A stretch of DNA of 64,000 nucleotides, from the IMG/VR virus record IMGVR_UViG_3300002835_000007, positions 62,001-126,000 of that record, one strand, 5' to 3'. The first letter of the stretch is position 1. Each line of letters opens with the position of its first letter. Under the pieces are notes generated by a model. It saw nothing but the letters and a program-made list of their open reading frames with translations. It had not been told where the DNA came from and did not search any database. Below are positions 16,020-41,873 of the stretch, piece after piece. The position numbers were made by a program, and so were the translations under genes.

Positions 16020-16082
16020 GGTAGGTTGGAGTCTACTCTTCTGAAACTTGTTAAGTCAGCACGTATCTCTTTCAAACCTACA
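16020..16082 (-). ncRNA. dispersed sRNA-like element copy 1
   Basis: AGAGUAGACUCC core, CUGA...UCAG hairpin, promoter TTAG-N20-TACATTTG on minus strand. Confidence 0.6.
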
Positions 16083-16294
16083 ATACAAATGTAGGTATAA
16101 TAAATTTAATATCCTAATAAAAAAAATTTTTTTATTAATTATTTTTTTATTATATTACACACGCACATATGTACACGTGTACATTTATAGAATAGTGGTA
16201 TTAAAATTTTTTTTAATTATTTTTTATAAAGTAGTAGGATATTAAAAAAGTTTATATATCTTTGTAGGGTATTAATCAATTAAAACAATTACAT

Positions 16295-17011
16295 ATGAGT
16301 TTGGTATTTAAACACAAAGACACTATTCAAGTTGTTACGTTAGCAACAACAAAGAATGACAAAATTGAATCTAATAAGAAACGTAAGATAGTACAAACGT
16401 ACACGTTTTCTTATAAGCAATTTGAGTTAGTTAAGAAACGTTTTGAAACGAATGAAGCAATTGGCATGAAAAACTTTTTTAGTAACGCAGATAGCAATTG
16501 TTTGGATTGTCCTTTCAATTCTTATGGCAAATGTTATACACATAAATTTAATCAATACGTTGGTTTTATTTCATCTTTAAAAAGTGTATTTAGAAAGTTT
16601 GGTAGTATAGACAATATACCTAACTTTGATATTTCAATGTTAGACAAAGTTACCAAAATGAGCAAAGGTACTTATGTACGTTTCGGAACGTATGGTGAAC
16701 CAAGTTTGCACCCAATTGAATTAATTCGTTCTATGGTAAAAGTATGCGACAATTGGACGGGTTATACGCACCAATGGAATAAAACTAATTTAGGTGATTA
16801 TTTTATGGCAAGTACGCATACAACAAGTGAGCAACAAAGTGCTGAAATTTTAGGTTATAGGTCGTTTGTAGCAACTGAAAATAAGTTAGGGTATGTTGGT
16901 TGCCCAGCGAGTAAAGAAATGGGTTATAAGTCGAGTTGTAGTGCTTGTAATTTATGTAGTGGAAAGTTAGGAACTAAAACAAATAAAAGTATAGAAATTA
17001 TCCTACATTAA
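16295..17011 (+). CDS. Cys-rich conserved phage protein (possible Fe-S/metal-binding, Gp88-like)
   Basis: CLDCP...CY, RFGTYGEP, TGYTHQW, CPAS...CSACNLC. Confidence 0.6.
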   Translation: MSLVFKHKDTIQVVTLATTKNDKIESNKKRKIVQTYTFSYKQFELVKKRFETNEAIGMKNFFSNADSNCLDCPFNSYGKCYTHKFNQYVGFISSLKSVFRKFGSIDNIPNFDISMLDKVTKMSKGTYVRFGTYGEPSLHPIELIRSMVKVCDNWTGYTHQWNKTNLGDYFMASTHTTSEQQSAEILGYRSFVATENKLGYVGCPASKEMGYKSSCSACNLCSGKLGTKTNKSIEIILH

Positions 17012-17111
17012 TGTAGGGTAATTTTTTTTAAAACTTTTTATATAAAGTAGTAGGAAATTAAAAAAGAATGTTTATATTTGTAATGTATTAATCAATTAAA
17101 TAAAATAAATT

Positions 17112-17471
17112 ATGGGACGTTATTATTCGGGTGACATTGAAGGAAAGTTTTGGTTTGCACTACAATCTTCGGATTGTGCAGATAGGTTTGGTGTAAGTGG
17201 ACAACAACCAAACATATTAGAGTACTATTACGAAGAAAGTGATTTAGAAGGTGTGGAAGAAGAAATTGCTAATATTGAGCAAAGTTTGGGTGAACAAATA
17301 AAAGTCATAGAAGACTTTTTTAGAACAAACAATGGTTACAATGATAGTATGTTGGCAGAGGCAAATATTACCACAAGTGAATTAAGTGATTACGCAGATT
17401 TATGTTTGGGTATACAAATAAGGGATTGTATAAAAGAAAATGGTGCTTGTCGTTTTGACGCAGAATGTTAA
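17112..17471 (+). CDS. conserved phage hypothetical protein
   Basis: MGRYYSGDIEGKFWFALQSSD; own promoter. Confidence 0.75.
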   Translation: MGRYYSGDIEGKFWFALQSSDCADRFGVSGQQPNILEYYYEESDLEGVEEEIANIEQSLGEQIKVIEDFFRTNNGYNDSMLAEANITTSELSDYADLCLGIQIRDCIKENGACRFDAEC

Positions 17472-17527
17472 AAAATTATCCCCTACTAAAATAGTAGGGG
17501 TTTTTGTTTTTAATTTTTATTTTTTTT

Positions 17528-17592
17528 ATATGGACGTGACGGAGTCTAGTCTTCCATTCCCACGGCACGTATCGATTATCAATCATCTACAA
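17528..17592 (-). ncRNA. dispersed sRNA-like element copy 2
   Basis: CCGU-GGGA-AUGG hairpin + AGACUAGACUCC; promoter CTTG-N20-TACATTTG. Confidence 0.65.
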
Positions 17593-17742
17593 TACAAATG
17601 TAGAAATAATAAATTAGATATGCAAGAAAAAAGTGATTAAAAATAAAAATAATTTTTTTTTCATTATTTTATATAAAAAGTTTGGAAATTAAAAAAAAAG
17701 CGTTACATTTGTAATGTATTAATAATCTAAAAAACAAATAAG

Positions 17743-18627
17743 ATGAACACACAAGAAAAAGTACAAGAAATTTTAAAGTCTAATGGATTAGATTTTACAA
17801 TTGAAAAAGCACCTATGATGGCTTTAAATTCTAATGGTATCTATGTACCAAGTGAGTATTTCGGTTTGATTAATTCAAGCACGAATGAAGTGATTAACAC
17901 CGTAAAAGAGGGTTATACGGTATCTCAAAACGAAGAGGTTGTTGAGTTGGTTATGCGTGGAATTGAACCTTTCGGAAACGATATTCAAGTTACCAAAGGT
18001 GGTGCGTTGAATGGTGGACGCAAAGTGTTTTTACAACTTGCTATCAATGGTGACGGCAAAGTTAATGGTGACACTATTAAGAAGTATATTACTATCGTGG
18101 ATAGTAATGACGGCAGTACGGGTCTATCGGTAGGTATTGGTGATTTAACTATGAGTTGCAGTAACCAATTTTTTAAGTTCTACAAAAGTGGACAATCTAA
18201 ATTTCGTCATACGGCAAGTTTGGAACGTAGAATCAAAGAAATTCCTTTCCTTATTGAAACGGCTTTATCTGAATCATTAAGACAAATTGAAATCTACAAT
18301 CAATTTGCAAGTACGCAAGTTTCACGTGATTTGGCACACAAAATGGTTAAACACTTATTAGGGTTTGACAAAGTGTATACAAGTGTAAAAGACTTGTCAG
18401 ATAAGTCTACACGTAGTATAAACAAAATGGATGCTTTATACAACGCTATTGAACGTGAAATGAATAGCAAAGGTGACACGTTGTGGGGTTTACATAGTGG
18501 AATTACATATTACACTACACACGAATTGTCAGCACCAAAACGTGACAATGGTAAAGTTGAAACTTTGTTACAAGGAACGGGTTACAATATGAACCAAGCA
18601 AGTTTGGAATTTGCTTTAAATTACTAA
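17743..18627 (+). CDS. DUF932 (DUF945/LGT_TIGR03299-like) domain protein
   Basis: LDFTIEK.P, Y.V.QNEE, L.GGRKVF, S.DGS, C.NQ, RHT. Confidence 0.75.
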   Translation: MNTQEKVQEILKSNGLDFTIEKAPMMALNSNGIYVPSEYFGLINSSTNEVINTVKEGYTVSQNEEVVELVMRGIEPFGNDIQVTKGGALNGGRKVFLQLAINGDGKVNGDTIKKYITIVDSNDGSTGLSVGIGDLTMSCSNQFFKFYKSGQSKFRHTASLERRIKEIPFLIETALSESLRQIEIYNQFASTQVSRDLAHKMVKHLLGFDKVYTSVKDLSDKSTRSINKMDALYNAIEREMNSKGDTLWGLHSGITYYTTHELSAPKRDNGKVETLLQGTGYNMNQASLEFALNY

Positions 18628-18738
18628 CAAAGTTACAAGGGGGTTATCAACACCCCCTTGTAAATAACTTTATTTGCAAAGGTCGAATTTATTTTGTACC
18701 TTTGCAAATTTTTTTCTTATATGGTAAAAAAAATATAA

Positions 18739-18800
18739 GGTAGGTTGGAGTCTACTCTTTCAAGATTTCCCTCGACCCGTTTCGGTTATCACCACCAACA
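18739..18800 (-). ncRNA. dispersed sRNA-like element copy 3
   Basis: UCGAGG-GAAA-UCUUGA hairpin + core; promoter TTTG-N20-TACCTTTG. Confidence 0.65.
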
Positions 18801-18932
18801 AAACAAAGGTAGGGATAATATATTTAAAAAACAAACTTTTGTTGCATAAAAAAAAATAATTATTTTCTCACAAAATAGTTGCAGAATTAAAAATAATGTT
18901 TATCTTTGTAGGGAACAATAAAACAAAACACA

Positions 18933-19472
18933 ATGAAAAATTTAAATGACGTAAGATTAATGGCAGAAACATTAATGACAAAACAATTCACGTTTAACAC
19001 GTACCATGGGGTTTATACATTGAGTGGTGAACAATTAGGTTATACGTTTAAGTTTGATAGTGCAAAACGTAGATTTGGTTGCTGTAGTTATGGTAAAAAA
19101 ACTATTGGTTTATCTATGCCACTATGTAATGAAAATTTAGATAAAATAGACACAAAGATTACTGACACTATGTTGCACGAATTGGCACACGCATTTTGTG
19201 TTCACGTGTATGGTGTAAGGGACGGAAGAGGTCATGGGTACAATTGGCAACATATTGCAAAACAAATTGGTTGTGACGCTAAAAGATGTTTTAGTAGTGA
19301 TAGTGTTAATTTACCTAAATCAAAATATACTTTGTTATGTGAGAGTTGTGGTAAAGAAACACCAAAACACAAAGTGATTAGAAAGACTTATGCTTGTGCT
19401 AAATGTTGTGATGAACATAACAACGGAAAATTCAGTTATGATTATCAATTAAAATTAGTTACGAATTATTAA
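18933..19472 (+). CDS. SprT-like zinc metalloprotease
   Basis: RFGCC, HELAH, GHG..W, C-terminal CxxC...CxxC. Confidence 0.85.
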   Translation: MKNLNDVRLMAETLMTKQFTFNTYHGVYTLSGEQLGYTFKFDSAKRRFGCCSYGKKTIGLSMPLCNENLDKIDTKITDTMLHELAHAFCVHVYGVRDGRGHGYNWQHIAKQIGCDAKRCFSSDSVNLPKSKYTLLCESCGKETPKHKVIRKTYACAKCCDEHNNGKFSYDYQLKLVTNY

Positions 19473-19477
19473 AAAAG

Positions 19478-19510
19478 ATTTGCATAAGTGAAAACTTATG
19501 CTTATCTTTG
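19478..19510 (+). promoter_or_regulatory. promoter with hairpin-forming spacer (representative of a family in 19-39 kb)
   Basis: TTT-GCATAAG-tgaaaa-CTTATGC-TTATCTTTG; same sequence near 22609, 23870, 34067. Confidence 0.75.
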
Positions 19511-19532
19511 ATTAAACAAAACAATAAAAGTT

Positions 19533-19763
19533 ATGAAAGATTTATTTGAAACACCAGAGTTGATACCAAACGAAGTACAAGCAATATTGGAATCATTTGA
19601 TGAGGATAGTGGAAACACCTATTTTGAGTTAGATAGGATATTGAGTGAGATAGAACCATTGGGTTATACCTTTGATTACTATTTGGACGCAGAACCATAT
19701 GGGTTAAGACCTATGGGTATGGAATTGGAAGAGTTAGAGGGTTGGGAACATATTAATGATTAA
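19533..19763 (+). CDS. hypothetical acidic protein
   Basis: DLFETPELIP...GYTFDYYLDAEPY. Confidence 0.75.
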   Translation: MKDLFETPELIPNEVQAILESFDEDSGNTYFELDRILSEIEPLGYTFDYYLDAEPYGLRPMGMELEELEGWEHIND

Positions 19764-20025
19764 TGTTATGAAAATAGTTAAAAGTTGTTTACGTAGTACT
19801 GACGATATAAAATACGAGAGGGTATTAGAAACAAGTACACACATTTATTTTTATCCAATGGGCGACCACAAAGATAAAAAATTATTTGCTAAAAAACATA
19901 ATAGGGTTATGAATCTAATTGCCGAGGGTGATTATGTTGATAATGAGATAATGGAAATTTTTGCAAGTGGGAATTATAGTTGGGTAAGTAAGAAATTTGA
20001 AAATAAATTTGGAAAATTGAAATAG
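19756..20025 (+). CDS. hypothetical protein
   Basis: overlapping ORF. Confidence 0.65.
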   Translation: MINVMKIVKSCLRSTDDIKYERVLETSTHIYFYPMGDHKDKKLFAKKHNRVMNLIAEGDYVDNEIMEIFASGNYSWVSKKFENKFGKLK

Positions 20026-20063
20026 TTTATTTATCTTTGTTGAAACAATTAAAAACAAATATT

Positions 20064-20903
20064 ATGAGAAATGAATTTAACAATTTAGTAGAAACTTTAA
20101 AACGTTGGGACTTGTATCAAATAGGTGATGAAGTTGATATGGCGTTGACAGATTTGTCTGATAAGATAGCAGAAGTTGAAAAACGTATTGAATGTGTTAA
20201 ACGTACTAATGTTGATAGTCACGAGATACTATTTACTAATCAAGTTAAATTGGAAGAAAGTATTGGGTATGATAATGTAGAGATACTACAAAGAAGTGTT
20301 ACTGATATTAACATTGCATTAGATTTAACCATTAATGAACCAATAGAGTGTAATTGGTATGGTTTATTCGAAGAACCAAAAGAAGAAATAGAGGATAAAT
20401 TTAAACCTAGAAGTGTAGCAGAATATGTTGCAACATTACCCAAGGAAGAACCAAAGGTATTAATACCAAAAGATAGTATTGTTGAGTGGAAAGAAACAAG
20501 ACAATATTATAGTGTTAATGGTGGTGCTAAAGCGAGAGTAACCGAAGACTATACAACGGAACACGAAAGTAACGATAATTGTGTTAAAGTTGAATGGTTG
20601 GATGAAAAAGCAAATAACCAACAAAATGGTGGCTATTTTAGAGATATGTTTAAAGAAGACTTTGAGTTACCAAGTGTACCAACTTTTTTATGTTATTCAG
20701 ATGATAACCATAATATTGTAAAAGACATTATTGCGAAGTTAAAAGTAATTGATGTTGACGGAGAAACTATGCAGTATATCTTAAAGGAAGTTGGTATGGA
20801 AGACCAAATGTTAAGGCAACTAATAATGAGTAGTACTGAAAGTAATACAAAAGATTTGTTGGAAGAGAAACGAATTTTGAGTAACCAAGGTAAATTAGTT
20901 TAA
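20064..20903 (+). CDS. hypothetical protein
   Basis: start moved to ATG downstream of promoter. Confidence 0.75.
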   Translation: MRNEFNNLVETLKRWDLYQIGDEVDMALTDLSDKIAEVEKRIECVKRTNVDSHEILFTNQVKLEESIGYDNVEILQRSVTDINIALDLTINEPIECNWYGLFEEPKEEIEDKFKPRSVAEYVATLPKEEPKVLIPKDSIVEWKETRQYYSVNGGAKARVTEDYTTEHESNDNCVKVEWLDEKANNQQNGGYFRDMFKEDFELPSVPTFLCYSDDNHNIVKDIIAKLKVIDVDGETMQYILKEVGMEDQMLRQLIMSSTESNTKDLLEEKRILSNQGKLV

Positions 20904-20993
20904 AATAAAATTAAAAAGATTGGATGAATGTTATTGTTTATCCAATCTTTATTCTTATATTTGTTAAACAAACCAATTAAAACTTTAGAACCT

Positions 20994-21188
20994 ATGGATT
21001 ATAGTATGTATTTATTTAGCAACCTTATCAAATTTTATGACAAGGAATTTGCTGACGCTTGTTATGACGAGCAATGGGATGATTTGCCAAGTTTATATGA
21101 TGAGTATGACAAAAGCAAATTCAATGTTGACACCAAAGGTGAATACGAATGTATGGAAAATTTCTTAAAAGATAAGTACAACAAATAA
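20994..21188 (+). CDS. hypothetical protein
   Basis: start moved to ATG 20994. Confidence 0.65.
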   Translation: MDYSMYLFSNLIKFYDKEFADACYDEQWDDLPSLYDEYDKSKFNVDTKGEYECMENFLKDKYNK

Positions 21189-21264
21189 TTTAATAATAAT
21201 CCAATTTATATTTGGTAGATTGGATTATTATTCTTATATTTGTTAAACATTAAAAATAAAGATT

Positions 21265-21702
21265 ATGGGAAGTTTTAGTTGGAACAAAGCAGATGAATTA
21301 ACGAACACTGAAAATGTTGCTTATGGTACACCTTTTAAATTCTTAATACCAAAAGAATTTGGTGGTGGGTTTATCAAAGATTACTATCAAGATTATGGTG
21401 AACTAGGAACAAAAGAAATTAGTGGTGAACCTAAATACGATATGTATGAACTATTAGCATTTTGGAACAATGCAGAGGATTTGAAATTTGAGGGTGAATA
21501 TCCATTGATGAAACAAATTGATGAACATACTGATTACAATAGAAGTAAAGGTATTGACATTGGTTGTTACGATGAACAAATATTAAAACTTAAATACCCT
21601 TTAAAATTAGTTTCAGCTTCATTCAAAGGTACGTATGAAGATTTGGAGACTTGTAGTTTAGGTGACCCCGACCAAGGGTTTTTTCCAAGAAGAAGAAATT
21701 AA
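21265..21702 (+). CDS. conserved phage hypothetical protein
   Basis: MGSFSW...Y.DYG...D.YELLA.WN...DPDQG. Confidence 0.75.
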   Translation: MGSFSWNKADELTNTENVAYGTPFKFLIPKEFGGGFIKDYYQDYGELGTKEISGEPKYDMYELLAFWNNAEDLKFEGEYPLMKQIDEHTDYNRSKGIDIGCYDEQILKLKYPLKLVSASFKGTYEDLETCSLGDPDQGFFPRRRN

Positions 21703-21785
21703 AAATAATTTAAAAATAACCTATCAAATATTTGGTAGGTTATTTTATTTTTACTATATTTGTATTGTAATCAAAAACAAACATT

Positions 21786-22202
21786 ATGAAAACTAAAAGA
21801 GAATTAGCAGAAAAACAAATTGAGTTACAAAACAGAGTTAATGCAGTAGCAAGTATTAATATTGTAACGTGTGGAAATTGTGGTAGTGTATTATTACACG
21901 ATAGAATGGATTCTGAAATTGAATGTGCGTGTTGCAAGTCAGTAATGGATTTATCTGATTGTCCCGATTTATGGTATGAGGGTTGCCAAAATAATAGTGA
22001 GTTTGACGAAGAAGAAATCTTAACAAAACAAATTAGTGTTGAAGACGTTGTAAGGGTTGCTATGGATTTAAAAATGAATCCGAGTATTGCAGAGATTAAC
22101 GAAGTATTAAAATACTACGATAGTGAAGCAGAGGAAGACAAAACGGCAACGTGGGAATTGATTGTGGAGAACTTATTGTATAATTGTGTTGCACCAAAAT
22201 AA
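21786..22202 (+). CDS. zinc-ribbon protein
   Basis: VTCGNCG...ECACC. Confidence 0.7.
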   Translation: MKTKRELAEKQIELQNRVNAVASINIVTCGNCGSVLLHDRMDSEIECACCKSVMDLSDCPDLWYEGCQNNSEFDEEEILTKQISVEDVVRVAMDLKMNPSIAEINEVLKYYDSEAEEDKTATWELIVENLLYNCVAPK

Positions 22203-22283
22203 TTTAAAATAAAATAACAAAAGATTTGGATAATCGAAATATTATCCTTATCTTTGTTTCACAAACAAATTAAAACTAATATT

Positions 22284-22592
22284 ATGAATGACATCGCAAA
22301 ATTAAAAAGTTTAATATCTGAAGTTAAAGATATTGATAGACCAAAGTTTGACAGAGTATACAATGAAGTACTTTTTCCAAGAATGGTTAACGTGGCAGAA
22401 AAATGGAAAAAAAATGAATTGTCCATTGGTAGTTATCAAAATGATGATACACACAACAAAGTAGTTGGTGAATTATTTGATGATAGCAATCTACAAAGAT
22501 TGGTTGAAACCAAAATGAAACCTTACCTTGAAGAAAAAGGATTCAAAGTTGTTATTTGCAGTCCGAGTTATTATGTTTATATTCGTTGGTAA
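22284..22592 (+). CDS. hypothetical protein
   Basis: own promoter; start moved to 22284. Confidence 0.7.
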   Translation: MNDIAKLKSLISEVKDIDRPKFDRVYNEVLFPRMVNVAEKWKKNELSIGSYQNDDTHNKVVGELFDDSNLQRLVETKMKPYLEEKGFKVVICSPSYYVYIRW

Positions 22593-22667
22593 AATAAATT
22601 AAAAAAAGATTTGCATAAGTGAAAACTTATGCTTATCTTTGTTTCACAAACAAAAACAATAAGAGTT

Positions 22668-22931: not shown

Positions 22932-22934
22932 ATT

Positions 22935-23261: not shown

Positions 23262-23292
23262 CCCACTTTTTTTGTGCGTGTAAAAAAATAAA

Positions 23293-23343: not shown

Positions 23344-23475
23344 TACAAAGATTGCAATAATAATTGACATATGCAAGTAAAATAGCAAAAAAAATAATTT
23401 TATTTTTTTTTAATAAAAGTGTTGTGGGAATGGAAATAATTACTATCTTTGTAGAGAACAATTAAACAAACGATT

Positions 23476-23853: not shown

Positions 23854-23924
23854 AACATTTTTAAAAAAGATTTGCATAAGTGAAAACTTATGCTTATCTT
23901 TGATAAACATTAAAACAAAACATT

Positions 23925-24137: not shown

Positions 24138-24200
24138 ATTTGGAATTAACAAAAATAGTAATTATATTTGTAGTGTATTAATCAATAAAAATAAATAGTT

Positions 24201-25040
24201 ATGCCAAACTGGATTACAAACAACGTAAGAATCATTGCTGATGAAACTTTATTAGCAAAGATTAGAGAAGAAGTAAAAGGAACACCATATAGTAATGGTG
24301 AAGACAAAGAATTTGATTTTAATCAAATTGCACCAATACCAACTGAATTGGTAGGTACAACAAGTCCTTGTCGCATTATTACACAAGAGGAATACGATAT
24401 ACAAGAGGAACGTATTACCAAAGGTGAATTAACGGAAAGTGAAGTACGTTTTGGAGTATCGAGAGGTATTACAAAAGAAATGCACGATGATTTTATTGAA
24501 CGATTTGGTTATGCTGATTGGTATGGGTGGCAAATTAGTAATTGGGGTACAAAGTGGAACGCAAGTGATGTGTATTGGAGTGATGATAATGAGAGTGTAA
24601 GTTTTAATACTGCGTGGAGTACACCTTTCAACTTATTTTTAAAACTATCTGAAAAATATCCCGAAGCACGTATTGAAGTTGAATATGCTGATGAAGACTT
24701 TGGTTACAATGTAGGAACTTATACTTTGGTAGGTGGAGTTGAAATTGAAGAAAATGTACCCGAAGGTGGCACACGTGAAGCATACGAAATGGCTCTTAAT
24801 ATTCAAGGTGGTGAAGACTATTATTTAGGTGATGATTTTTGTGATGTAGATGAAGACGAGGAATTATCAAAGTTTACAAATTCAATGATTGAAATTGCAT
24901 ACGATAGAGATTATATGCCAACCGAGGATTGTGGCTATGCAAGGAATGTGTTGGAACGATTTAAAGAGATTGCGTTGGCAAATGAAAACTTTGAGTTGGT
25001 TGCAACAATACAAAAGGAATTAGAAAAAGTAGAAAAATAA
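24201..25040 (+). CDS. DUF1281/YubB ferredoxin-like domain protein
   Basis: MPNW, FDFN.I.P.P, WY.W...NWGTKWN, F.TAWS.P. Confidence 0.75.
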   Translation: MPNWITNNVRIIADETLLAKIREEVKGTPYSNGEDKEFDFNQIAPIPTELVGTTSPCRIITQEEYDIQEERITKGELTESEVRFGVSRGITKEMHDDFIERFGYADWYGWQISNWGTKWNASDVYWSDDNESVSFNTAWSTPFNLFLKLSEKYPEARIEVEYADEDFGYNVGTYTLVGGVEIEENVPEGGTREAYEMALNIQGGEDYYLGDDFCDVDEDEELSKFTNSMIEIAYDRDYMPTEDCGYARNVLERFKEIALANENFELVATIQKELEKVEK

Positions 25041-27830: not shown

Positions 27831-27929
27831 TACAAATGTAAGATAAAAAAAATTAATATCCTAACAAAAAAAGTTTTTTTATTTAAAAAAGATTTATTAT
27901 CTTTGTTGAAACAAATTAAATTAAAAGTT

Positions 27930-28650: not shown

Positions 28651-28721
28651 AATAATTAAAAAAGATTTGGATAAGTGAAAACTTATCCTTATCTTTACTG
28701 AAACAAATAAAACAAAAACAA

Positions 28722-31770: not shown

Positions 31771-31869
31771 TACAAAGATTGTAATAATATTTTTAAAAAA
31801 CAAGTAAAATAAATTTTTTTATTTAAAAAGTTTTTCTTATATTTGCAAAACAATCTAAATTAACAAGCA

Positions 31870-32761: not shown

Positions 32762-32898
32762 TACAAAGATTGCAATAATATTTGACATATGCAAGCAAAA
32801 AGTGAAAATAATTTTATTTTTATTTTATTACAAAATAGTTGCAGAATTAAAAATAATGTTTATCTTTGTAGGGTATTAATCAATTAAAATAAAACACA

Positions 32899-33917: not shown

Positions 33918-34079
33918 ATGGAAAAGGAAATTAAAAAAGTATGGGAAGAATTGATTAGTCTTTATGACATCGCAGACCAATTAGAAGACAATGGACAAGA
34001 CGCAGAAGAAGTTAGAATAAAACTAAATAATATTACTGATTTTTTTGTAAAAAACTTTGAAAAAGATTTGCATAAGTGA
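33918..34079 (+). CDS. hypothetical protein
   Basis: start moved to 33918. Confidence 0.6.
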   Translation: MEKEIKKVWEELISLYDIADQLEDNGQDAEEVRIKLNNITDFFVKNFEKDLHK

Positions 34080-34126
34080 AAACTTATGCTTATCTTTGTT
34101 TTATAAATCAATTAAAATAAAATAGT

Positions 34127-34501: not shown

Positions 34502-34532
34502 AAATTAAAGGGTATTACACCCTTTTTTTATT

Positions 34533-34606: not shown

Positions 34607-34738
34607 AACAAATATCGGAATTATAAATCAATTATGCAAGAAAAAAGTAAAAATAATTTTATTTTTATTTTATATAAAATGTTGCACAATTAAAAAAGAA
34701 TGTTTATATTTGTACTATAATCATTAAAACAAAACATT

Positions 34739-35083: not shown

Positions 35084-35158
35084 AAAAAGTTAAAAAAGGT
35101 TTGCATAATCAAAAGATTATGCTTATCTTTGTTTCATAATCATTAAAACATACACAAG

Positions 35159-35353: not shown

Positions 35354-35431
35354 AAAAAGTTAAAAAAGGTTTGGAATTGTAAAAACAATTCCTTACCTTT
35401 GATAAAAGAAATCAATTAAAAAACAAACATT

Positions 35432-35659
35432 ATGAAAAAAGAATTATTTATTTTGGCAGTATTAGGTATAGTAGGTCAAATTGTTTCACTAGTAGGTATA
35501 TTTTTCTATTCAGAAACCAATGACGCATTAATGATAAACTTATGGAGTTTTCTAACCTTTGGGTGTTTATCGGCTGTTGTGTTGTTTGTAGACAAGAAAC
35601 AAACTGAAAACAAGATGAAAGAAGAATTTAAAGATATAGAAGAATTAGAAGAAAATTAA
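35432..35659 (+). CDS. small two-TM membrane protein
   Basis: two hydrophobic helices; own promoter. Confidence 0.65.
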   Translation: MKKELFILAVLGIVGQIVSLVGIFFYSETNDALMINLWSFLTFGCLSAVVLFVDKKQTENKMKEEFKDIEELEEN

Positions 35660-35870
35660 AATATAGTAGGAAAGGGTTTATATGAGAGGAAAATACTCTG
35701 CTGAACCTCGTAGACTTGGTAACGATACATCATTGCATAATTAGTTCCCCTTTCCGTATTGTTTATCACTAATTATGCTTTGACAAACCTTTCATATTGT
35801 AAATGACTTAGAGGAATGTTTCGTTAGAGGTGTTGTTGGGAATAGGGTTTACCTATTCCCAATTCCTATT
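35660..35870 (+). ncRNA. candidate pseudoknotted ncRNA
   Basis: three 8-10 bp long-range helices plus terminal hairpin; no ORF. Confidence 0.4.
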
Positions 35871-35899
35871 TATACAACTTTGTTTTTTCATTTTTATTT

Positions 35900-35964
35900 T
35901 GTTCACGTATGGACGTGTTGGAGTCTACTCTTCTACTCTCGCAGCACGTACCTTAATCGTACAT
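35900..35964 (-). ncRNA. dispersed sRNA-like element copy 9
   Basis: CUGC-GAGA-GUAG + core; promoter GTTG...TATCTTTG. Confidence 0.65.
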
Positions 35965-36100
35965 AACAAAGATAGTAATAATATTGACTTGTGCAACAAA
36001 AAAAGTAAAAAAAAATAATTTATTTATTTTTCACAATATAGTAGGAAATTAAAAAAGAATGTTTATCTTTGTAAGGTATTAATCAATAAAACAAATTACA

Positions 36101-36721
36101 ATGGGTTACACAACTGATTTTAGTGGTAGATTTGAACTTAACAAGGAGTTAAGTCCAAAGATGGAACAATACTTAAAATTGTTCAACGAAACACGCAGAA
36201 TGGAAAGAAACACTGATGAAGTGTTTGGAGTACAAGGTGAGTTTTACGTATTTGGTGGTGGAAGTTTTGGACAAGACCACGAAGACAATGTAGTAGATTT
36301 TAATGAGCCACCAAGCACTCAACCAAGTCTTTGGAATCAATGGACACCTAGCGATGACCGAATGGGTATTGAGTGGGATTGTGGTGAGAAGTTTTATAAC
36401 TATACTGAATGGTTAGTTTATCTTATTCACAAAATTCTAGCACCGAATGGTTATGTCCTTAATGGAGTGGTAGAATATAGTGGTGAGGAAGTTGGTGATG
36501 TTGGTGAAATAGTTGTTGTTGATAATAGAGTATTTGTCAGAGAGAAATACCAAGATGGCGACAATGGGGAAAGTACACCACAAAACGCACAAAAGTTTGG
36601 CAGAGTTAATGGCAACTATGTTTATATCAAAGACTTTATGAGAACTGATGTAGTGTTGATTTTAGATGGTACTGATAACGAATTACCTAATGGGGTTGTA
36701 AAGTTATTAGAAAATAACTAA
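36101..36721 (+). CDS. conserved phage hypothetical protein
   Basis: MGYTTDFSGRF, QPSLWNQW, EKFY.Y.EWL.YLI, GY.LNG. Confidence 0.8.
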   Translation: MGYTTDFSGRFELNKELSPKMEQYLKLFNETRRMERNTDEVFGVQGEFYVFGGGSFGQDHEDNVVDFNEPPSTQPSLWNQWTPSDDRMGIEWDCGEKFYNYTEWLVYLIHKILAPNGYVLNGVVEYSGEEVGDVGEIVVVDNRVFVREKYQDGDNGESTPQNAQKFGRVNGNYVYIKDFMRTDVVLILDGTDNELPNGVVKLLENN

Positions 36722-37177
36722 AACATTTTAAAAAAAGATTTGGATAATCGAAAGATTATCCTTATCTTTGTTTCACAAACAAATTAAAACAAAAAGTTAT
36801 GTTAGGCAAAATCGTTTATTTAGGAATCTTATTAGGAGGATTAGCAGTAATCAAATTAGTGTGTAATTATTTAGATAAAAGAAATGAAATTTAAAGAAAT
36901 AACCTTAACCCAGCACGAAATGCAACAAGCATTAAAGAGTAGTGTTCACAAGTCTAAAAAAGCGTTTCAACGCAAAGATAAACATAAAAAGAATTATATT
37001 AACAAGTTAATGCAAGAGGATTATGTATGATAAAGAAATAATGTTGATTGAAATCTATTATGGGGTTTCAATCAACGCAAAAAACTAAATTGTGTTTGTT
37101 TAGTGTTTTGATTATAACGAGGAAGTGGTTGCCGAATGGTTGCCACTTTTTTTATGCAGTAACGCACACACGAAACA

Positions 37178-37230
37178 TATACACGCAACGGAGTCTACTC
37201 TTCTACTCTCGTAGCACGTCTTACTGACAT
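37178..37230 (-). ncRNA. dispersed sRNA-like element copy 10
   Basis: CUAC-GAGA-GUAG + core; promoter GTTG...TATCTTTG. Confidence 0.6.
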
Positions 37231-37367
37231 AACAAAGATAGAAATAATTTTGATATATCCAACACAAAAATGAAAATAATTTAAAAAAAATTAAATGCTA
37301 ATTATAGTATGTTGTGGCAACAAGATTCAATGCTTATATTTGTAGTATAACTTTAAAACAATATATT

Positions 37368-37607
37368 ATGGAATGCACATTAGAAAATTTAGAGAGAGTA
37401 TTTAAAATCATTATTGAGCAACACGCAGACAATAATGAACACGCAGAATTTGACGATGAAAGTGATTTAGTTGATGTAGTCAAAAGAGTAGTTGAATGGT
37501 TGGATGAAGAACCTACATTTTGTTGTCAAAATTGTGGTGGTGGGTTTACACGTGATGAAATGGTATTTGGTGATGATGTAGATTTATGTAAAGATTGTGC
37601 AAAATAA
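37368..37607 (+). CDS. zinc-ribbon protein
   Basis: CQNC...CKDC; start moved to 37368. Confidence 0.65.
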   Translation: MECTLENLERVFKIIIEQHADNNEHAEFDDESDLVDVVKRVVEWLDEEPTFCCQNCGGGFTRDEMVFGDDVDLCKDCAK

Positions 37608-37667
37608 ATTTGCATAATCAAAACATTATGCTTATCTTTGTTAAACAAACAATTTAAAACTTATATT

Positions 37668-37991
37668 ATGTCAAGCAAAAACTTAAACAAAGATTTAGAA
37701 CAATTAGAAAAACAAGTTTACCACTACTTTAATGAGTTGTTGGAGAAACAAGAAGAAATAGTAATCTTTGATGAATGTGATTTAGAACACGACACACCCG
37801 ATGATTACCTTGAAATGCGTAATGATATTACGGGAAACGTGTTTGATGTCCACCCACTAAAAGTAACCCAAAATGGAATACTTGTAGTTGAAGCAGACGG
37901 AAGTTTTGTAAGACACTTGATTAAGTTGCAAGATTTATCAAGCACACAAGACAAAATTACCCTAATAGAATTAATGGAAAATAGTTTGTAA
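37668..37991 (+). CDS. hypothetical protein, tandem paralog 1
   Basis: VIFDE.DLE.DTPD.YLE.R...TGNVFDVHPLKV shared with next gene. Confidence 0.75.
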   Translation: MSSKNLNKDLEQLEKQVYHYFNELLEKQEEIVIFDECDLEHDTPDDYLEMRNDITGNVFDVHPLKVTQNGILVVEADGSFVRHLIKLQDLSSTQDKITLIELMENSL

Positions 37992-38069
37992 AAAACTATA
38001 AAAAGATTTGGATAAGTGAAAACTTATCCATATCTTTGTTGTATAAATAAACAATTAAAATAAACTAAA

Positions 38070-38423
38070 ATGAGAATAAGTGCTTTAAAAAGAGATATAG
38101 ATGTTTTAAAAACACATATCCAAATGACATTCGAGGAAATGTTATATCAACAAAAAGAATTTGTTATCTTTGATGAAAAAGATTTAGAAAATGACACACC
38201 CGATAATTACCTAGAAATTAGAGATAAAGAAACGGGCAACGTATTTGATGTACACCCACTAAAAGTTCTTAAAGTTGGTAATTACTACGATATTGAAGTA
38301 GTAACGGCAGACGGAAAATTTACAAAACATTCAATTAAAATGTGGGATTTATCAATAGAGGATAGAATTAATTTAATTGAATTAATGGACAAATGTTTGG
38401 TAGATAATGATAACGAAATATAA
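38070..38423 (+). CDS. hypothetical protein, tandem paralog 2
   Basis: same motif as 37668-37991. Confidence 0.75.
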   Translation: MRISALKRDIDVLKTHIQMTFEEMLYQQKEFVIFDEKDLENDTPDNYLEIRDKETGNVFDVHPLKVLKVGNYYDIEVVTADGKFTKHSIKMWDLSIEDRINLIELMDKCLVDNDNEI

Positions 38424-38485
38424 ACAAATAAACTTGCATAAGTCAAAACTATTCACTATCTTTACGGAAACAAATAATTAATACT

Positions 38486-38869
38486 ATGTATACTTTAATC
38501 GACACAAAGAAAAACAAAGAACTTGCAACATTAAATTCTAAACAAGAATTGATTGACAAAGTTAATTTAATCGCTAATGACGATAAATTTAGAATCGCAC
38601 CAATCAACACTATTGAAGATTGTTTTGAGTATATCAATCAATATACATTGGACTATGATTTAGTCAAAGATAGTGAAGTTAATTCGTTTATCGAAACTTA
38701 TGGTATTGAAGTTGATGAAAATGAATCAGACCACTATGTTGAACTAATGATGGACGACCACAAATGTATAAAATGGAAAGGTAAAGAATATTATATAGGT
38801 GAAAATCTAAATTTAGATGAAGTCGAAGATAGTGTTTATATGATAATAGCATATTCACTACACGTATAA
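38486..38869 (+). CDS. hypothetical protein
   Basis: own promoter. Confidence 0.7.
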   Translation: MYTLIDTKKNKELATLNSKQELIDKVNLIANDDKFRIAPINTIEDCFEYINQYTLDYDLVKDSEVNSFIETYGIEVDENESDHYVELMMDDHKCIKWKGKEYYIGENLNLDEVEDSVYMIIAYSLHV

Positions 38870-38952
38870 AATAAATTAAAATAAATGGTACTATCGTTTG
38901 GTAGTACCATTTATATTTACTATCTTTACATAAACAAATAAACATAAACACA

Positions 38953-39249
38953 ATGAGAACAATTACTGAAAAAGCAATCGAAAAGTTTTTAAATGCTGAA
39001 ACTTTTAAAAATGGTAACACAAGTGTAGAAGTTTTGCCTAACGTAACAATACTAAAACTATTTGGCAACGCAATCGCTTATCAATACAACGACCCCGAAA
39101 GAACCTTATCAATTACTAATTGTGGGTATGAAACGGCAACAACAAAAGAAAGGTTAAATGGTTTACCTAACGTAAAAATAAATCAAACCAAAGGTAAATG
39201 GTTTCTGAATGATGTTGAATGGGACGGAAATTTAATTGATGTAAATTAA
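38953..39249 (+). CDS. conserved phage hypothetical protein
   Basis: NT.V...L.GN.IA...G..T.TTKERLNGL. Confidence 0.75.
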   Translation: MRTITEKAIEKFLNAETFKNGNTSVEVLPNVTILKLFGNAIAYQYNDPERTLSITNCGYETATTKERLNGLPNVKINQTKGKWFLNDVEWDGNLIDVN

Positions 39250-39404
39250 TAACTAAATGGTAGGTGCGACCTATGTACATATTTCTGTACATTGGTTGCC
39301 ACCACACCCCCTAATTTAATCAATTAGTTGTTATCAAATAAAAAATATAATGTTTGAATAATAATACTTACAATAAGTAAATTATAAGACAAAAAAAAAT
39401 GAGA

Positions 39405-39665
39405 CTACTTTGGTAGTCTCATTCTTGGGTTGGTATACCCAGTGAGTTCGTTAAAGCCCCACTTGATGTGAGTCTTTTCGCCATAAACGGCAGACGAACT
39501 TTTGTATGGTTGGTGAACGTAATCGTTCAACATTTCCCATTTGGTCATTCCCATACCATAGCCGTTATAACGATATGTTCTGAAGAATGCAACGCCATCT
39601 TGACGTATACCAACTTGAACTGAACGTCCATACGTATCAGTTCCGTGAAAACAATTTGCTTCCAT
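39405..39665 (-). CDS. hypothetical protein
   Basis: start moved to MEANC; minus-strand promoter at about 39723-39755. Confidence 0.7.
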   Translation of the reverse strand: MEANCFHGTDTYGRSVQVGIRQDGVAFFRTYRYNGYGMGMTKWEMLNDYVHQPYKSSSAVYGEKTHIKWGFNELTGYTNPRMRLPK

Positions 39666-39999
39666 AACAAAAAGAAAAAAAATAAGTAAGAAAAAGAACT
39701 TTTGTCCCTCATTTGGACGATACAAAGATAAACATAATTTTTAAATAACCAAACATTTTTTAATCTTTTTTTATTTTTTTTTATTCCTATCTAATCTTAT
39801 TTATAACATTAATCTTTATACTATTCTTATTCTTTTTTTGCTTGTATTGTTGCTTGTAATAAACTTTAAATACTAAACCAATACATAATACCAAAACAAC
39901 TTTAAAACGTCTTAAAACGAATTAAAATAAGAGCAAAAAATAATTTAAAAATAATTCACTTTTTTCTTGCATATCTAAAATCTAATTACGATATTTGTA

Positions 40000-40068
40000 T
40001 TGTCAATGATTGATAATCGAGACAAGTTGCTAACCAAAGCAAAAGACTAGACTCCGACACGTCTATAC
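40000..40068 (+). ncRNA. dispersed sRNA-like element copy 11 (inverted)
   Basis: UUGCU-AACCAA-AGCAA + AA + GACUAGACUCC; promoter CTTG...GATATTTG. Confidence 0.6.
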
Positions 40069-40125
40069 TTTTTTAACGTATGCCAATAAAAAAAAGAGTT
40101 CATTTAATGAACCCTTTTCAGTCGG

Positions 40126-40545
40126 TTAAAGACTTGCACAAGTCGGACCTAACCCACGTTCGATGGATTGTGCGTCCGTTAACGTGCGTCCACAACGTAT
40201 GCAATTGCCCGTATGCATAACTTGAACCTTCTCATCCAACAAGTCGAACTTGCTTTGTTCAACCCTTTCAAGCACCCAACAAATTGCTGTTGCCGATGGC
40301 GAGTTAACCACTTGCCCTTTTTGGTAAATCTTACCCTTGAAATAAGACCCCAAACGAACGAATTTTTGGTACTCTTGTTCAACGCTAATATGCGTGTACC
40401 AATTGCCCTTAAATTTAGAACGAGAGATAGCATACGTGTAGTCTTTGCCCGTAGCAATAGACTTAATAGTGAAATCAGAACCACTATTGTTTTTTTCAGC
40501 CTTGATAACTGAAAAAAGAGCCGAAGATGAAATAATGTGTGACAT
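40126..40545 (-). CDS. DUF6011-like zinc-finger protein
   Basis: CIRCGRTLT...SIERGLGPTC. Confidence 0.75.
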   Translation of the reverse strand: MSHIISSSALFSVIKAEKNNSGSDFTIKSIATGKDYTYAISRSKFKGNWYTHISVEQEYQKFVRLGSYFKGKIYQKGQVVNSPSATAICWVLERVEQSKFDLLDEKVQVMHTGNCIRCGRTLTDAQSIERGLGPTCASL

Positions 40546-40681
40546 AAGGAAAAAATTTAAATGAATAACTTATTACAAAGATAATACTTTTTTTCATTCC
40601 CACAATACCTTAACGAAAAAAAAAATAAAATTATTTTTAATAATTGTTTGCATATATCATTTCTATTATCTATCTTTGTTT

Positions 40682-40756
40682 TGTCAATGATTGATAGTCG
40701 AGACAAGTCGCTAAGCAAAGTGAGAGAGTAGACTCCGACACGTCCATACGTGAACG
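40682..40756 (+). ncRNA. dispersed sRNA-like element copy 12 (inverted)
   Basis: UCGCU-AAGCAA-AGUGA + GA + GAGUAGACUCC; promoter TTTG-N20-TATCTTTG. Confidence 0.65.
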
Positions 40757-40783
40757 AACTATACTAAATAAAAAAGGGGATTT

Positions 40784-41002
40784 TTAAACCCCCAATTTTT
40801 CAAAGATAGGACGACTAATTTCGTTTCTAATAAGCATAGGTATTAGATACTCAAATAAGTCGTCAGATTCAATCTTTAGACGTTCATACTTAACTTTTGG
40901 TATGTCAGCCCTAACGTCATTTCCAACTTGTTCGGCAAAGAATTTTTCACCTTCCCTAACTAATAGACAATTTCCAACTTGTCTTACAACTACACGTAAC
41001 AT
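40784..41002 (-). CDS. hypothetical protein
   Basis: own minus-strand promoter. Confidence 0.65.
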   Translation of the reverse strand: MLRVVVRQVGNCLLVREGEKFFAEQVGNDVRADIPKVKYERLKIESDDLFEYLIPMLIRNEISRPIFEKLGV

Positions 41003-41132
41003 AAAGAACGATTTTGAATTACCCTACAAAGATAACATTAATTTTGATTCCCACAATACCCTAACCAAAAAAAAATTAATATAAACGAAAAAAGTCCATA
41101 AGGTATAACCCTATGGACAGATTTCTGTACAT

Positions 41133-41456
41133 TTAGTACTCAACTTCAACGTCACGTGCTTGTGCGTGCACGTATTCCAAGAACTTGTCGTCATTCAAGA
41201 CGATAGGTTCGTGCCACACGATTTCGTGTTCGGTATACGTATACCGATACCCCTCGTTAGACTCGTCTTGTAGCAGACGTTTGAAAGCGTTTATTGAGCG
41301 TTCCTCGTCATACATAAGGTAATCAACATTAAGGTTGACTTGAAAGATTTTACCACCTTTCTTTTTCCAATGTTGTGGACATTCCCCTTGACCATCCCAC
41401 GTGTGAGCAGCATAGTTTTCCTCAACTTGTGCGTAAATGTTTACCAATGTTTTCAT
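41133..41456 (-). CDS. conserved phage hypothetical protein
   Basis: Q..ENY.AH.WDG.GECPQ.WK.KGG. Confidence 0.75.
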   Translation of the reverse strand: MKTLVNIYAQVEENYAAHTWDGQGECPQHWKKKGGKIFQVNLNVDYLMYDEERSINAFKRLLQDESNEGYRYTYTEHEIVWHEPIVLNDDKFLEYVHAQARDVEVEY

Positions 41457-41658
41457 AACAAAAAAGTATTAAAAAATAAATAAAAAAAGAACTAACGCCC
41501 AACCGAAGTACATATCATATCCTCAATTGAACAATACAAAGATAGGGATAAATTTTAAATAACCAAAACTTTTTTCACTTTTTTTTTTCAAAGTTATTAA
41601 CACTAAATTGTTAATAACTTTTTTTAAAAAAAAACTTGCATATTAAAAAAATAAAACC

Positions 41659-41709
41659 CAGGTTGGAGTCTACTCTTCCATTCCCACGGCACGTACCTTA
41701 ATTGTACAC
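41659..41709 (-). ncRNA. dispersed sRNA-like element copy 13
   Basis: CCGU-GGGA-AUGG + core; promoter CTTG-N20-TATATTTG. Confidence 0.6.
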
Positions 41710-41873
41710 TACAAATATAGGAAGGATAAATTTAATATGCAAGCAAAAGTTATTAACAATTCAATTTTTTTTATTGTTAATAACTTTGAGTGAATTATTT
41801 TTAATTTTTTGTTGCAATAGTCAATTTAATGTGTAACTTTGTCAAAGTTATTAATCATTAAAACTTTTAAATT

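What the first reader, a model, noticed from the sequence alone, without database searches (positions are those of the whole stretch)
16020..41870. Each sRNA element is half of a back-to-back promoter module that flips with gene orientation
Seen: the repeating unit is [terminator of previous cluster] <- sRNA <- promoter | AT-rich spacer | promoter -> first gene of the next cluster. First genes are 16295, 17743, 18933, 23476, 27930, 31870, 32899, 34739, 36101, 37368 and 41874. In the minus-strand block (39.4-41.5 kb) copies 11 and 12 are inverted together with genes 39405-39665 and 40126-40545. Several upstream terminators look bidirectional (e.g. about 34506-34529) and could end the sRNA. Inference: the element is a fixed part of the cluster head. 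It may couple sRNA dose to early transcription, insulate clusters, or act as a unit of recombinational shuffling.
Basis: partly seen in the sequence, partly recalled or inferred. Interest (0 to 1): 0.7.

Follow-up and report, generated by a model that had tools for sequence, protein, structure and literature searches.

The report
Multi-copy phage small RNA gene cassette
The 13 repeats are real: each is a small structured-RNA gene with its own host-type promoter, set back-to-back with a gene promoter, and it belongs to an undescribed RNA family shared by unrelated environmental phages; its function is unknown and its transcription untested.

Summary
Observation confirmed. The window lies in a 206-kb fragment of a T4-like jumbo phage from lake water, with Bacteroidota-type promoters. 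It holds 13 copies of one module; none occur elsewhere in the 206 kb.

Each module reads: [terminator or U-run] <- conserved element <- promoter (TTG-N20-TAnnTTTG) | AT-rich spacer | promoter -> ATG. Eleven copies lie antisense to plus-strand genes. Two are mirrored in the minus-strand block.

The element behaves as an RNA read from the reverse promoter:
- Its hairpin keeps pairing while its sequence changes.
- The hairpin has more G.U than A.C cells and mostly GNRA loops in that sense.
- An invariant 12-mer, AGAGUAGACUCC, follows the hairpin.
- A U-run often comes next.

The family is wide, with at least 118 IMG/VR stretches. It occurs in jumbo phages, in ~60-kb phages, and in cultured Tenacibaculum phage Larrie. 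These three share only thymidylate synthase. The element is almost absent from 185,579 bacterial and archaeal species genomes and has no Rfam match.

In relatives the promoter-RNA cassette is as often co-oriented with its neighbours as divergent. Some homologous head genes lack it.

Function is unknown. The most likely role is a dosed, host-directed small RNA or decoy. No transcript data exist.

The parts
16010..16080 (-). RNA element copy 1 (hairpin P2, invariant AGAGUAGACUCC, then AACCUACCC and a U-run)
   Evidence: Covariance model R1, 47 bits; U-run follows
17523..17586 (-). RNA element copy 2
   Evidence: R1, 73.6 bits; shared two-way terminator at 17480-17500
18729..18796 (-). RNA element copy 3 (6-bp P2 with GAAA loop; U-run follows)
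   Evidence: R1, 52.8 bits
23284..23347 (-). RNA element copy 4 (U-run follows)
   Evidence: R1, 71.3 bits
27768..27831 (-). RNA element copy 5
   Evidence: R1, 72.9 bits
31713..31771 (-). RNA element copy 6
   Evidence: R1, 62.7 bits
32699..32757 (-). RNA element copy 7
   Evidence: R1, 74 bits
34544..34607 (-). RNA element copy 8
   Evidence: R1, 75.8 bits; two-way terminator at 34507-34525
35902..35960 (-). RNA element copy 9
   Evidence: R1, 74.8 bits; orthologue in G001 has a compensatory change in P2
37172..37235 (-). RNA element copy 10
   Evidence: R1, 59.9 bits
40006..40073 (+). RNA element copy 11 (mirrored; U-run follows)
   Evidence: R1, 64.3 bits
40687..40754 (+). RNA element copy 12 (mirrored)
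   Evidence: R1, 59.2 bits; hairpin 40776-40793 beyond it
41647..41705 (-). RNA element copy 13 (U-run follows; tandem with the minus-strand gene 41133-41456 and divergent from 41874)
   Evidence: R1, 66.2 bits; 100% identical module in G001
16086..16264 (.). Module 1: back-to-back promoter pair with AT-rich spacer (RNA promoter on the minus strand, gene promoter on the plus strand, ATG 16295)
17595..17711 (.). Module 2 promoter pair (ATG 17743)
18804..18908 (.). Module 3 promoter pair (ATG 18933)
23346..23451 (.). Module 4 promoter pair (ATG 23476)
27833..27905 (.). Module 5 promoter pair, only 9 nt between the -33 elements (ATG 27930)
31773..31845 (.). Module 6 promoter pair, 9-nt spacer (ATG 31870)
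32764..32868 (.). Module 7 promoter pair (ATG 32899)
34609..34712 (.). Module 8 promoter pair (ATG 34739)
35967..36071 (.). Module 9 promoter pair (ATG 36101)
37233..37342 (.). Module 10 promoter pair (ATG 37368)
39723..39997 (.). Module 11, mirrored: RNA promoter on the plus strand (ends 39997), degenerate adjacent gene promoter, next good minus-strand promoter ending 39723 (ATG 39712)
40576..40678 (.). Module 12, mirrored promoter pair (ATG 40545 on the minus strand)
41712..41841 (.). Module 13 promoter pair (ATG 41874)
17480..17500 (.). Two-way intrinsic terminator shared by the upstream gene and RNA copy 2
   Evidence: called on both strands
34507..34525 (.).
   Evidence: called on both strands
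40776..40793 (.). Terminator hairpin beyond RNA copy 12; a U-rich tract follows it in both senses

Best explanation
Each repeat is a self-contained small-RNA gene.

What the sequence and comparisons show:
- A host-type (Bacteroidota sigma-A) promoter drives a transcript of about 50-70 nt where a U-run follows. Where the neighbouring gene's two-way terminator is used, the transcript would be about 95-125 nt.
- The RNA has a clamp hairpin (P2, 4-8 bp). Its sequence is free but its pairing is kept.
- An invariant single-stranded 12-mer, AGAGUAGACUCC, follows the hairpin directly.

What is inferred:
- In this phage the RNA gene was copied together with a gene-facing promoter and the AT-rich DNA between them. 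That explains 13 back-to-back cassettes that head gene groups and flip with them.
- The same RNA occurs in unrelated phages that share no other non-metabolic gene, and it is missing from bacterial genomes. It therefore most likely acts in trans on a conserved host component.
- The 12-mer would be the contact surface. The 13 promoters would supply a high dose as soon as host polymerase reads the region.
- The divergent layout itself is a local, convenient packaging (shared AT-rich upstream DNA, shared terminators). It is not needed for the RNA's function.
For: Copies and layout.

Own promoter: every copy here and in G001, and 20 of 20 copies in relatives, has one. So does cultured phage Larrie.

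P2 structure:
- Pairs are 85-100% paired, with CG/UA swaps in 12, 15, 5 and 17 cells across 35 distinct sequences. No shuffle or slid partner comes near.
- RNAalifold recovers exactly these four pairs, all with compensatory changes.

Strand:
- P2 has 8/13/9 G.U cells against 1/2/5 A.C cells.
- Sense hairpins are more stable than antisense ones (Wilcoxon p=5e-4), with GAGA, GGGA, GAAA, GUAA, GGAA or UACG loops.
- In 29 of 32 copies that have a U-run, the last predicted helix encloses the motif. In 26 of 32 it ends within 4 nt of the U-run.

Breadth: at least 118 IMG/VR stretches, with 74 further model hits.

Unrelated carriers: only thymidylate synthase is shared by this phage, G052 and Larrie. 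No neighbouring protein is shared across lineages.

Phage restriction: two hits in 185,579 species genomes, both on candidate-phyla MAG contigs.

Orientation is free in relatives.
Against: - No RNA data: one metatranscriptome held only stray pieces. Transcription, ends and timing are all inferred.
- Five of the 13 copies lack a convincing terminator in the RNA sense. They could instead run antisense into the upstream gene.
- Only P2 is solid. The outer helix P1 is 60-78% paired, shows no G.U excess, and is not recovered by RNAalifold.
- No target was found. No complement of 10 nt or more exists in the 206 kb. A match to 16S rRNA is at chance level.
- The host genome is not available.
- 'Early' expression is a guess from gene content.
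Confidence: 0.6

Rival explanations
1. Cis-acting leader element: an attenuator, riboswitch-like or nut-like antitermination site. The hairpin plus conserved linear motif, placed just after a promoter and before a U-run, would decide whether polymerase stops or reads on. It would read into downstream genes where the element is co-oriented, or antisense through the upstream group in this phage.
For: - It always lies next to a promoter.
- In 26 of 32 copies the helix enclosing the motif ends within 4 nt of a U-run.
- It is co-oriented with downstream genes in G016, in the ~60-kb phages and in half of the wider family.
- Five window copies have no terminator and would read on.
Against: - In co-oriented cases a further promoter usually sits between the U-run and the next gene.
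- In this phage, G001 and Larrie nothing co-oriented lies downstream to regulate.
- The motif does not resemble boxA (own knowledge).
- P2 loops are not conserved.
Confidence: 0.15
2. Promoter-coupling or insulator module. What matters is a divergent promoter firing next to the gene promoter, through shared AT-rich upstream DNA and negative supercoiling between the two. A short terminated transcript keeps neighbouring groups apart. The RNA product itself would have no role.
For: - The back-to-back geometry is tight and regular in 12 of 13 modules.
- The whole module, including the forward promoter and leader, is repeated as a unit (families D5, D6 and D9).
- Two-way terminators are shared.
Against: - It does not explain an invariant 12-mer and a covarying hairpin kept across unrelated phages.
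- It does not explain cassettes that are tandem rather than divergent.
Confidence: 0.1
3. DNA-level site. The near-palindrome GAGT-AG-ACTC would be bound or cut by a protein, acting as an operator, a recombination or nicking site, or an origin. The neighbouring promoter would be incidental or would provide activating transcription.
For: - The motif has 4-bp inverted half-sites (read directly from the sequence).
- Module boundaries coincide with differences between this phage and G001, and a truncated copy sits in G001.
- Assembled contigs break at the modules.
Against: - The adjacent hairpin shows compensatory changes with G.U pairs, which points to a single strand.
- No protein is shared by the three carrier lineages that could recognise a DNA site.
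- The fixed promoter-to-motif polarity holds in every copy.
- Contig breaks are expected at any repeat.
Confidence: 0.07

Closest known systems
Phage- and prophage-encoded small regulatory RNAs with their own promoter and intrinsic terminator (for example lambda OOP, DicF, IsrK; own knowledge; recent examples listed)
   Same: A short non-coding transcript, a dedicated promoter, a hairpin plus U-run end, and a conserved single-stranded stretch that could act as a seed.
   Different: No sequence or Rfam relation. It is present in 13 copies in one genome. It is shared by unrelated lytic phages. The hairpin sequence is free while a 12-mer is invariant. No complementary target has been found.
RNA anti-CRISPRs (Racr, solitary repeat units; Camara-Wilpert et al. 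2023, own knowledge)
   Same: Small phage RNAs, each with its own promoter, containing a hairpin plus a short conserved flank. They are thought to titrate a host defence component, and dose matters.
   Different: Racrs copy the host's CRISPR repeat, including the hairpin sequence. Here the hairpin sequence varies freely. No repeat-like match could be tested because no host genome is available.
lambda nut and rrn boxB-boxA antitermination sites (own knowledge)
   Same: A hairpin of variable sequence, often with GNRA-like loops, next to a conserved linear element just downstream of a promoter.
   Different: In this phage the element faces away from the genes. The motif is unlike boxA. A U-run and usually a fresh promoter follow it.
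Type III antitoxin RNA repeats (ToxI) and phage pseudo-ToxI (own knowledge)
   Same: A multi-copy short RNA unit in phages whose dose counters a host system.
   Different: ToxI units are tandem and are processed from one transcript. Here the units are dispersed over 26 kb, each with its own promoter.
Divergent promoter pairs coupled by supercoiling (ilvY-ilvC, leu-500; own knowledge)
   Same: Back-to-back promoters separated by short AT-rich DNA.
   Different: Those systems need no conserved transcript. Here the transcript is the conserved part, and the divergent layout is optional.

Membership tests
Bacteroidota sigma-A promoter (-33 TTTG / -7 TAnnTTTG) | A -7 box TAnnTTTG with TTG about 19-21 nt upstream | tested here: met
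   Found 98 times against 22 in shuffles. Present upstream of all 13 elements, with two -33 variants, and of 20 of 20 copies in relatives. The E. coli consensus is not enriched.
Bacteroidota sigma-A promoter (-33 TTTG / -7 TAnnTTTG) | A mapped transcription start site | not testable with these tools
   No usable RNA run was found.
Stand-alone small RNA gene | Conserved secondary structure with compensatory changes | tested here: met
   Hairpin P2 meets this. The outer helix P1 does not.
Stand-alone small RNA gene | An intrinsic terminator in the RNA sense | tested here: inconclusive
   Eight of 13 window copies have a U-run or a two-way hairpin and five have none. In relatives, 26 of 32 folds end within 4 nt of a U-run.
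Stand-alone small RNA gene | No conserved reading frame | tested here: met
   Length-changing indels occur inside the element. An AUG is present in only a few leaders, and in different frames (read from the sequences).
Base-pairing trans-acting sRNA | A complementary target site | tested here: not met
   No complement of 10 nt or more exists in the 206-kb record. A 16S rRNA match is at chance level (P about 0.5). Host mRNAs could not be searched.
RNA anti-CRISPR (solitary repeat unit) | Resemblance to a CRISPR repeat of the host, including its hairpin | not testable with these tools
The free hairpin sequence argues against membership.
nut / boxB-boxA antiterminator | Lies in the leader of the operon it acts on, in the same orientation | tested here: not met
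   In the window the element is antisense to both neighbours in 11 of 13 copies and divergent from the gene on its promoter side in 13 of 13.
N4-type hairpin promoter for a virion RNA polymerase | A 5-7 bp stem with a 3-nt loop just upstream of the start, facing early genes | tested here: not met
   Loops are 4-7 nt. The element faces away from genes here and is preceded by a host-type promoter. No phage polymerase was found among the large ORFs of this record.
Any Rfam 15 family / tRNA | A covariance-model or ARAGORN match | tested here: not met
   There were no matches at gathering score. Nothing relevant appeared at E<=5 over five copies. ARAGORN found no tRNA or tmRNA.

The most novel reading that the evidence does not exclude
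A horizontally traded RNA decoy used by many unrelated phages that probably infect Flavobacteriia-like hosts. The clamp hairpin would present the invariant AGAGUAGACUCC to a conserved host factor, such as a defence nuclease, an RNA-binding regulator or a signalling molecule. The phage would overwhelm that factor by dose, with 13 promoter-equipped genes in this jumbo phage. This would be an RNA-based host-takeover or counter-defence tool of a new type, testable at once in Tenacibaculum with phage Larrie.
Probability: 0.22. Interest if true: 0.85.

Novelty: new variant of a known kind. Interest (0 to 1): 0.62.

Why it matters
Small RNAs of lytic environmental phages, and of phages of Bacteroidota in particular, are almost unknown.

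This is a compact RNA with a clear signature. It is kept unchanged in a 12-base stretch across phages that otherwise share nothing. It is amplified to 13 promoter-driven copies in one genome. That pattern points to a common, important host target.

One carrier, Tenacibaculum phage Larrie, is cultured together with its host. The RNA, its partner and its effect on infection can therefore be tested directly.

The finding also gives a clean example of how a promoter-RNA cassette is reused, in either orientation, as a building block at gene-group boundaries in mosaic phage genomes.

Tried and rejected
- Rfam, at gathering scores and at E<=5: nothing. A 33-bit MicX match on the other strand is far below the cut-off of 75.
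- tRNA or tmRNA: none.
- Close or cultured relatives by DNA: none for the window. A cultured T4-like Flavobacterium phage (immuto) has no element.
- Transcript evidence: one riverine metatranscriptome held four stray pieces, none at an element.
- Population variants: contigs from four lake runs break at the modules, and all joints have short sides typical of repeats. No dependable rearrangement was seen. Depth over the c13 module is 5-15 times that of its flanks, which may only mean shared or repeated sequence.
- Seed complement in the phage: only one 9-mer, which is chance level.
- 16S rRNA helix 42 complementarity (GGAGUCUGC, confirmed in E. coli): runs of this length arise in about half of shuffled motifs, so this was rejected.
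- Partner protein by neighbourhood: a small protein family flanks the element in the ~60-kb phages. It has no homologue in this genome, and it has no Pfam or PHROG name.
- Shared proteins across three carrier genomes: only thymidylate synthase.
- Outer helix P1, and a long-range pairing of the 5' end with AACCUAC: seen in some copies but not general.
- Small peptide: no conserved frame.
- Phage-polymerase promoter: rejected on orientation and on the host promoter upstream.
- Comparisons with Cas12a and Cas13b repeats, the sarcin-ricin loop, tRNA arms and preQ1 aptamers were made from memory only. They gave no convincing likeness.

Full report
CONTEXT
The window is bases 62,001-126,000 of a 205,931-base IMG/VR virus record, judged 58% complete. 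It has 27-34% G+C and is found in many lake and freshwater metagenomes. The record has a terminase, a portal, a T4-type major capsid protein and a DNA polymerase. No RNA polymerase was seen among its large ORFs. The closest cultured capsid is that of a Flavobacterium myovirus, at 41% identity. The E. coli promoter consensus is not enriched (98 found, 110.6 expected). The Bacteroidota form, TTG-N18-22-TAnnTTTG, is enriched (98 found, 22 in shuffles). Region 16-42 kb is packed with small genes of unknown function, including a DUF932 protein and a SprT-like protein.

The core GGAGTCTASTCTTY occurs 13 times against 0.66 expected, and nowhere else in the 206 kb. Aligned in gene orientation (A1), every copy shows the same order:
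- a hairpin with a T-run, or just an A/T-rich stretch;
- the core;
- 0-14 variable bases;
- the reverse complement of a promoter;
- an AT-rich spacer;
- a forward promoter;

The reverse -7 box lies 42-58 nt from the core. The spacer between the -33 elements is mostly about 40 nt and 78-100% A+T. The forward -7 box lies 24-32 nt before the ATG. Copies 11 and 12 are mirrored within the minus-strand block. Copy 11's adjacent forward promoter is degenerate, and the next good one lies about 270 nt further on.

IT IS AN RNA, READ AWAY FROM THE GENES
In the sense downstream of the reverse promoter, the element reads as follows:
- a leader;
- (G)ACG(U/G)G;
- a 4-8 bp hairpin (P2);
- RAGAGUAGACUCC;
- either CACGUC or CCUACC;
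- often a U-run.

Evidence for P2:
- Its sequence changes while pairing is kept. In the 17 copies of this phage and G001, its four modelled pairs are 88-100% paired, and three of them show double changes.
- With 35 distinct sequences from relatives they are 85-98% paired, with 12, 15, 5 and 17 doubly changed cells. No shuffle or slid partner comes near.
- The same holds in 65 further distinct sequences.
- RNAalifold, run without my structure, returns exactly these four pairs, all with compensatory changes.

Evidence for the strand:
- P2 has 8, 13 and 9 G.U cells against 1, 2 and 5 A.C cells in the three alignments.
- Hairpins are more stable in this sense (p=5e-4). Their loops are mostly GAGA, GGGA, GAAA, GUAA or GGAA, with one UACG.

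The outer helix I first drew (P1) is not dependable. It is 60-78% paired, has no G.U excess and is not recovered by RNAalifold. Indels inside the element and the lack of a common frame rule out a peptide.

3' ENDS
In the window, five copies (c1, c3, c4, c11, c13) carry a U-run 8-13 nt after the motif. Three (c2, c8, c12) reach a two-way hairpin 60-75 nt on. Five (c5, c6, c7, c9, c10) have nothing convincing. Among 32 distinct copies with a U-run, the last predicted helix encloses the motif in 29, and it ends within 4 nt of the U-run in 26.

RELATIVES
Three IMG/VR contigs are the same phage at 99.99-100% identity. One 29.5-kb contig (G001) is 72-89% identical and has four copies at orthologous places.

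The capsid protein finds 597 relatives. My covariance model hits 7 of 50 of their records, with six copies in G009, five in G017 and six in G016. It finds none in the group at 58% capsid identity, which includes a complete 294-kb genome. Every one of these 20 copies has its own -33/-7 promoter 30-76 nt upstream of the motif.

Carriers fall into three kinds:
- Jumbo phages with Bacteroidota promoters.
- Genomes of 58-66 kb, some complete with terminal repeats, holding one or two copies. These are co-oriented with a block of small genes.
- The cultured Tenacibaculum phage Larrie (Cbastvirus, 77.5 kb), with about four copies in unannotated gaps. The copy at 18812 repeats the window's layout exactly: gene <- promoter | promoter -> RNA -> U-rich tail, then a two-way hairpin at the end of the preceding gene.

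This phage, a 64.5-kb carrier (G052) and Larrie share only thymidylate synthase at BLASTP 1e-4. No protein next to the element is common to them. In 185,579 bacterial and archaeal species genomes the 19-base pattern hits twice, both on contigs of candidate-phyla MAGs. The motif is not in Rfam, and it was not found in the searchable literature.

IS THE BACK-TO-BACK MODULE OBLIGATORY? NO
- In the window and G001, the gene on the promoter side is divergent in 17 of 17 cases. In other jumbo relatives it is divergent in 14 of 20 and tandem in 6 of 20, including four in a row in G016.
- In the wider set, copies with Bacteroidota promoters are antisense to both neighbours 13 times and co-oriented with both 13 times. 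The rest are mostly co-oriented.
- Gene 40126-40545, headed by divergent copy 12, has a 60%-identical homologue in G016 with the element 120 nt upstream in the same orientation.
- The order copy 2 - DUF932 gene - copy 3 - SprT-like gene is kept in G017. By contrast, homologues of head genes 23476, 27930 and 37368 have no element within 1-3 kb.
- Head-type forward promoters without an RNA partner occur at 17014-17109 and 24151-24203.

The unit that evolution keeps is therefore promoter-RNA-(U-run). In this phage the larger module, including the forward promoter and leader, has been multiplied as a block (repeat families D5, D6 and D9).

HINTS OF EXCHANGE AT MODULES
- The c13 module is identical to G001 over about 250 nt, beside a gene region that is 78% identical overall.
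- G001 has a truncated extra copy fused to the c10 orthologue.
- The 2.2-kb inverted block carrying c11 and c12 is missing from G001, with its right edge at the c13 module.
- Metagenome contigs break at the modules, but this gave no trustworthy joints.

HOW IT MOST LIKELY WORKS
Shown:
- a multi-copy unit;
- a dedicated promoter motif;
- a covarying hairpin;
- an invariant 12-mer;
- wide distribution restricted to phages;
- free orientation.

Inferred:
- Host polymerase makes a short RNA from each cassette.
- The hairpin holds the 12-mer in an exposed position.
- The RNA acts in trans on a host component common to the hosts of these unrelated phages.
- Copy number sets the dose.

I found no target. 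There is no complement of 10 nt or more in the phage. An 11-bp match to 16S rRNA helix 42 is what chance gives.

The rivals are a cis-acting attenuator or antiterminator, a promoter-coupling or insulating device with an irrelevant product, and a DNA site. They are listed with their evidence in the rival explanations. The first stays open because five copies lack a terminator, and because half of the wider family sits upstream of co-oriented genes.

VERDICT
The element is a new, widespread phage RNA family of unknown function, and a cultured system is available to test it.

Noticed in passing
window 19482-19501, 22613-22632, 23874-23893, 28669-28688, 34070-34089, 35103-35122, 36742-36761, 38009-38030 and about 16 more: About 24 internal promoters carry an 8-bp hairpin exactly between the -33 TTTG and the -7 TAnnTTTG. 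Its arms covary (GCATAAGT/ACTTATGC, GGATAATC/GATTATCC, GGAATTGT/ACAATTCC). The scan calls them terminators on both strands, so a terminator appears to be built into the promoter spacer.
   Followed up: partly
window 17014-17109 and 24151-24203: Forward promoters of the 'cluster head' type, with the GTATTAATCAAT leader, that have no RNA element beside them (families D5 and D15).
   Followed up: no
window about 15936, 18677 and 31640 (minus strand): Further minus-strand promoter matches 70-90 nt beyond RNA copies 1, 3 and 6. What they drive is unclear; only very short minus-strand ORFs follow.
   Followed up: no
L022 about 2845-2905 (G001): A truncated extra copy of the element (TATGGACGTGTCGGAGTCTAG...) is fused just upstream of the orthologue of copy 10. 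It looks like a recombination scar inside the invariant motif.
   Followed up: partly
window 39374-41615: The whole minus-strand block, carrying copies 11 and 12 and four small genes, is absent from relative G001. G001 has about 400 nt of other sequence there.
   Followed up: partly
window 7459-12364 (minus strand): Two 479-aa and two 331-aa ORFs of identical length, arranged alternately, which look like a duplicated pair. The three I scanned (both 479-aa ORFs and one 331-aa ORF) have no Pfam match; their similarity to each other was not compared.
   Followed up: no
window 59326-61839 (-), 62662-63939 (+), 53757-55175 (+): The phage encodes a full ClpB/ClpA-type two-ring AAA+ protein. It also has a thymidylate synthase of 425 aa whose Pfam match comes in two stretches (a possible insertion), and a leucine-rich-repeat protein.
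   Followed up: no
L256-L259 (G052, a 64.5-kb phage with terminal repeats): The genome has a 2,936-aa ORF with no PHROG match. The motif GCTATACA[C/T] (often TGCTATACAC) occurs seven times on the coding strand of the small-gene block. A hairpin with a 3-nt loop (GGGTGTATAGCATACAGCCC) lies 45 nt upstream of its RNA element. This may be a phage-specific promoter system.
   Followed up: partly
L141-L215 (the ~60-kb carrier phages): A conserved 75-125 aa protein family (motif KRFVVRKSLIG...YNHD...MPCW) lies directly before or after the RNA element, often in two or three copies. It has no Pfam or PHROG name and no homologue in this genome.
   Followed up: partly
window 37638-37991 and 38070-38423: Neighbouring genes that share a 127-nt stretch at 79% nucleotide identity and look like paralogues. 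G001 has only one of them.
   Followed up: no
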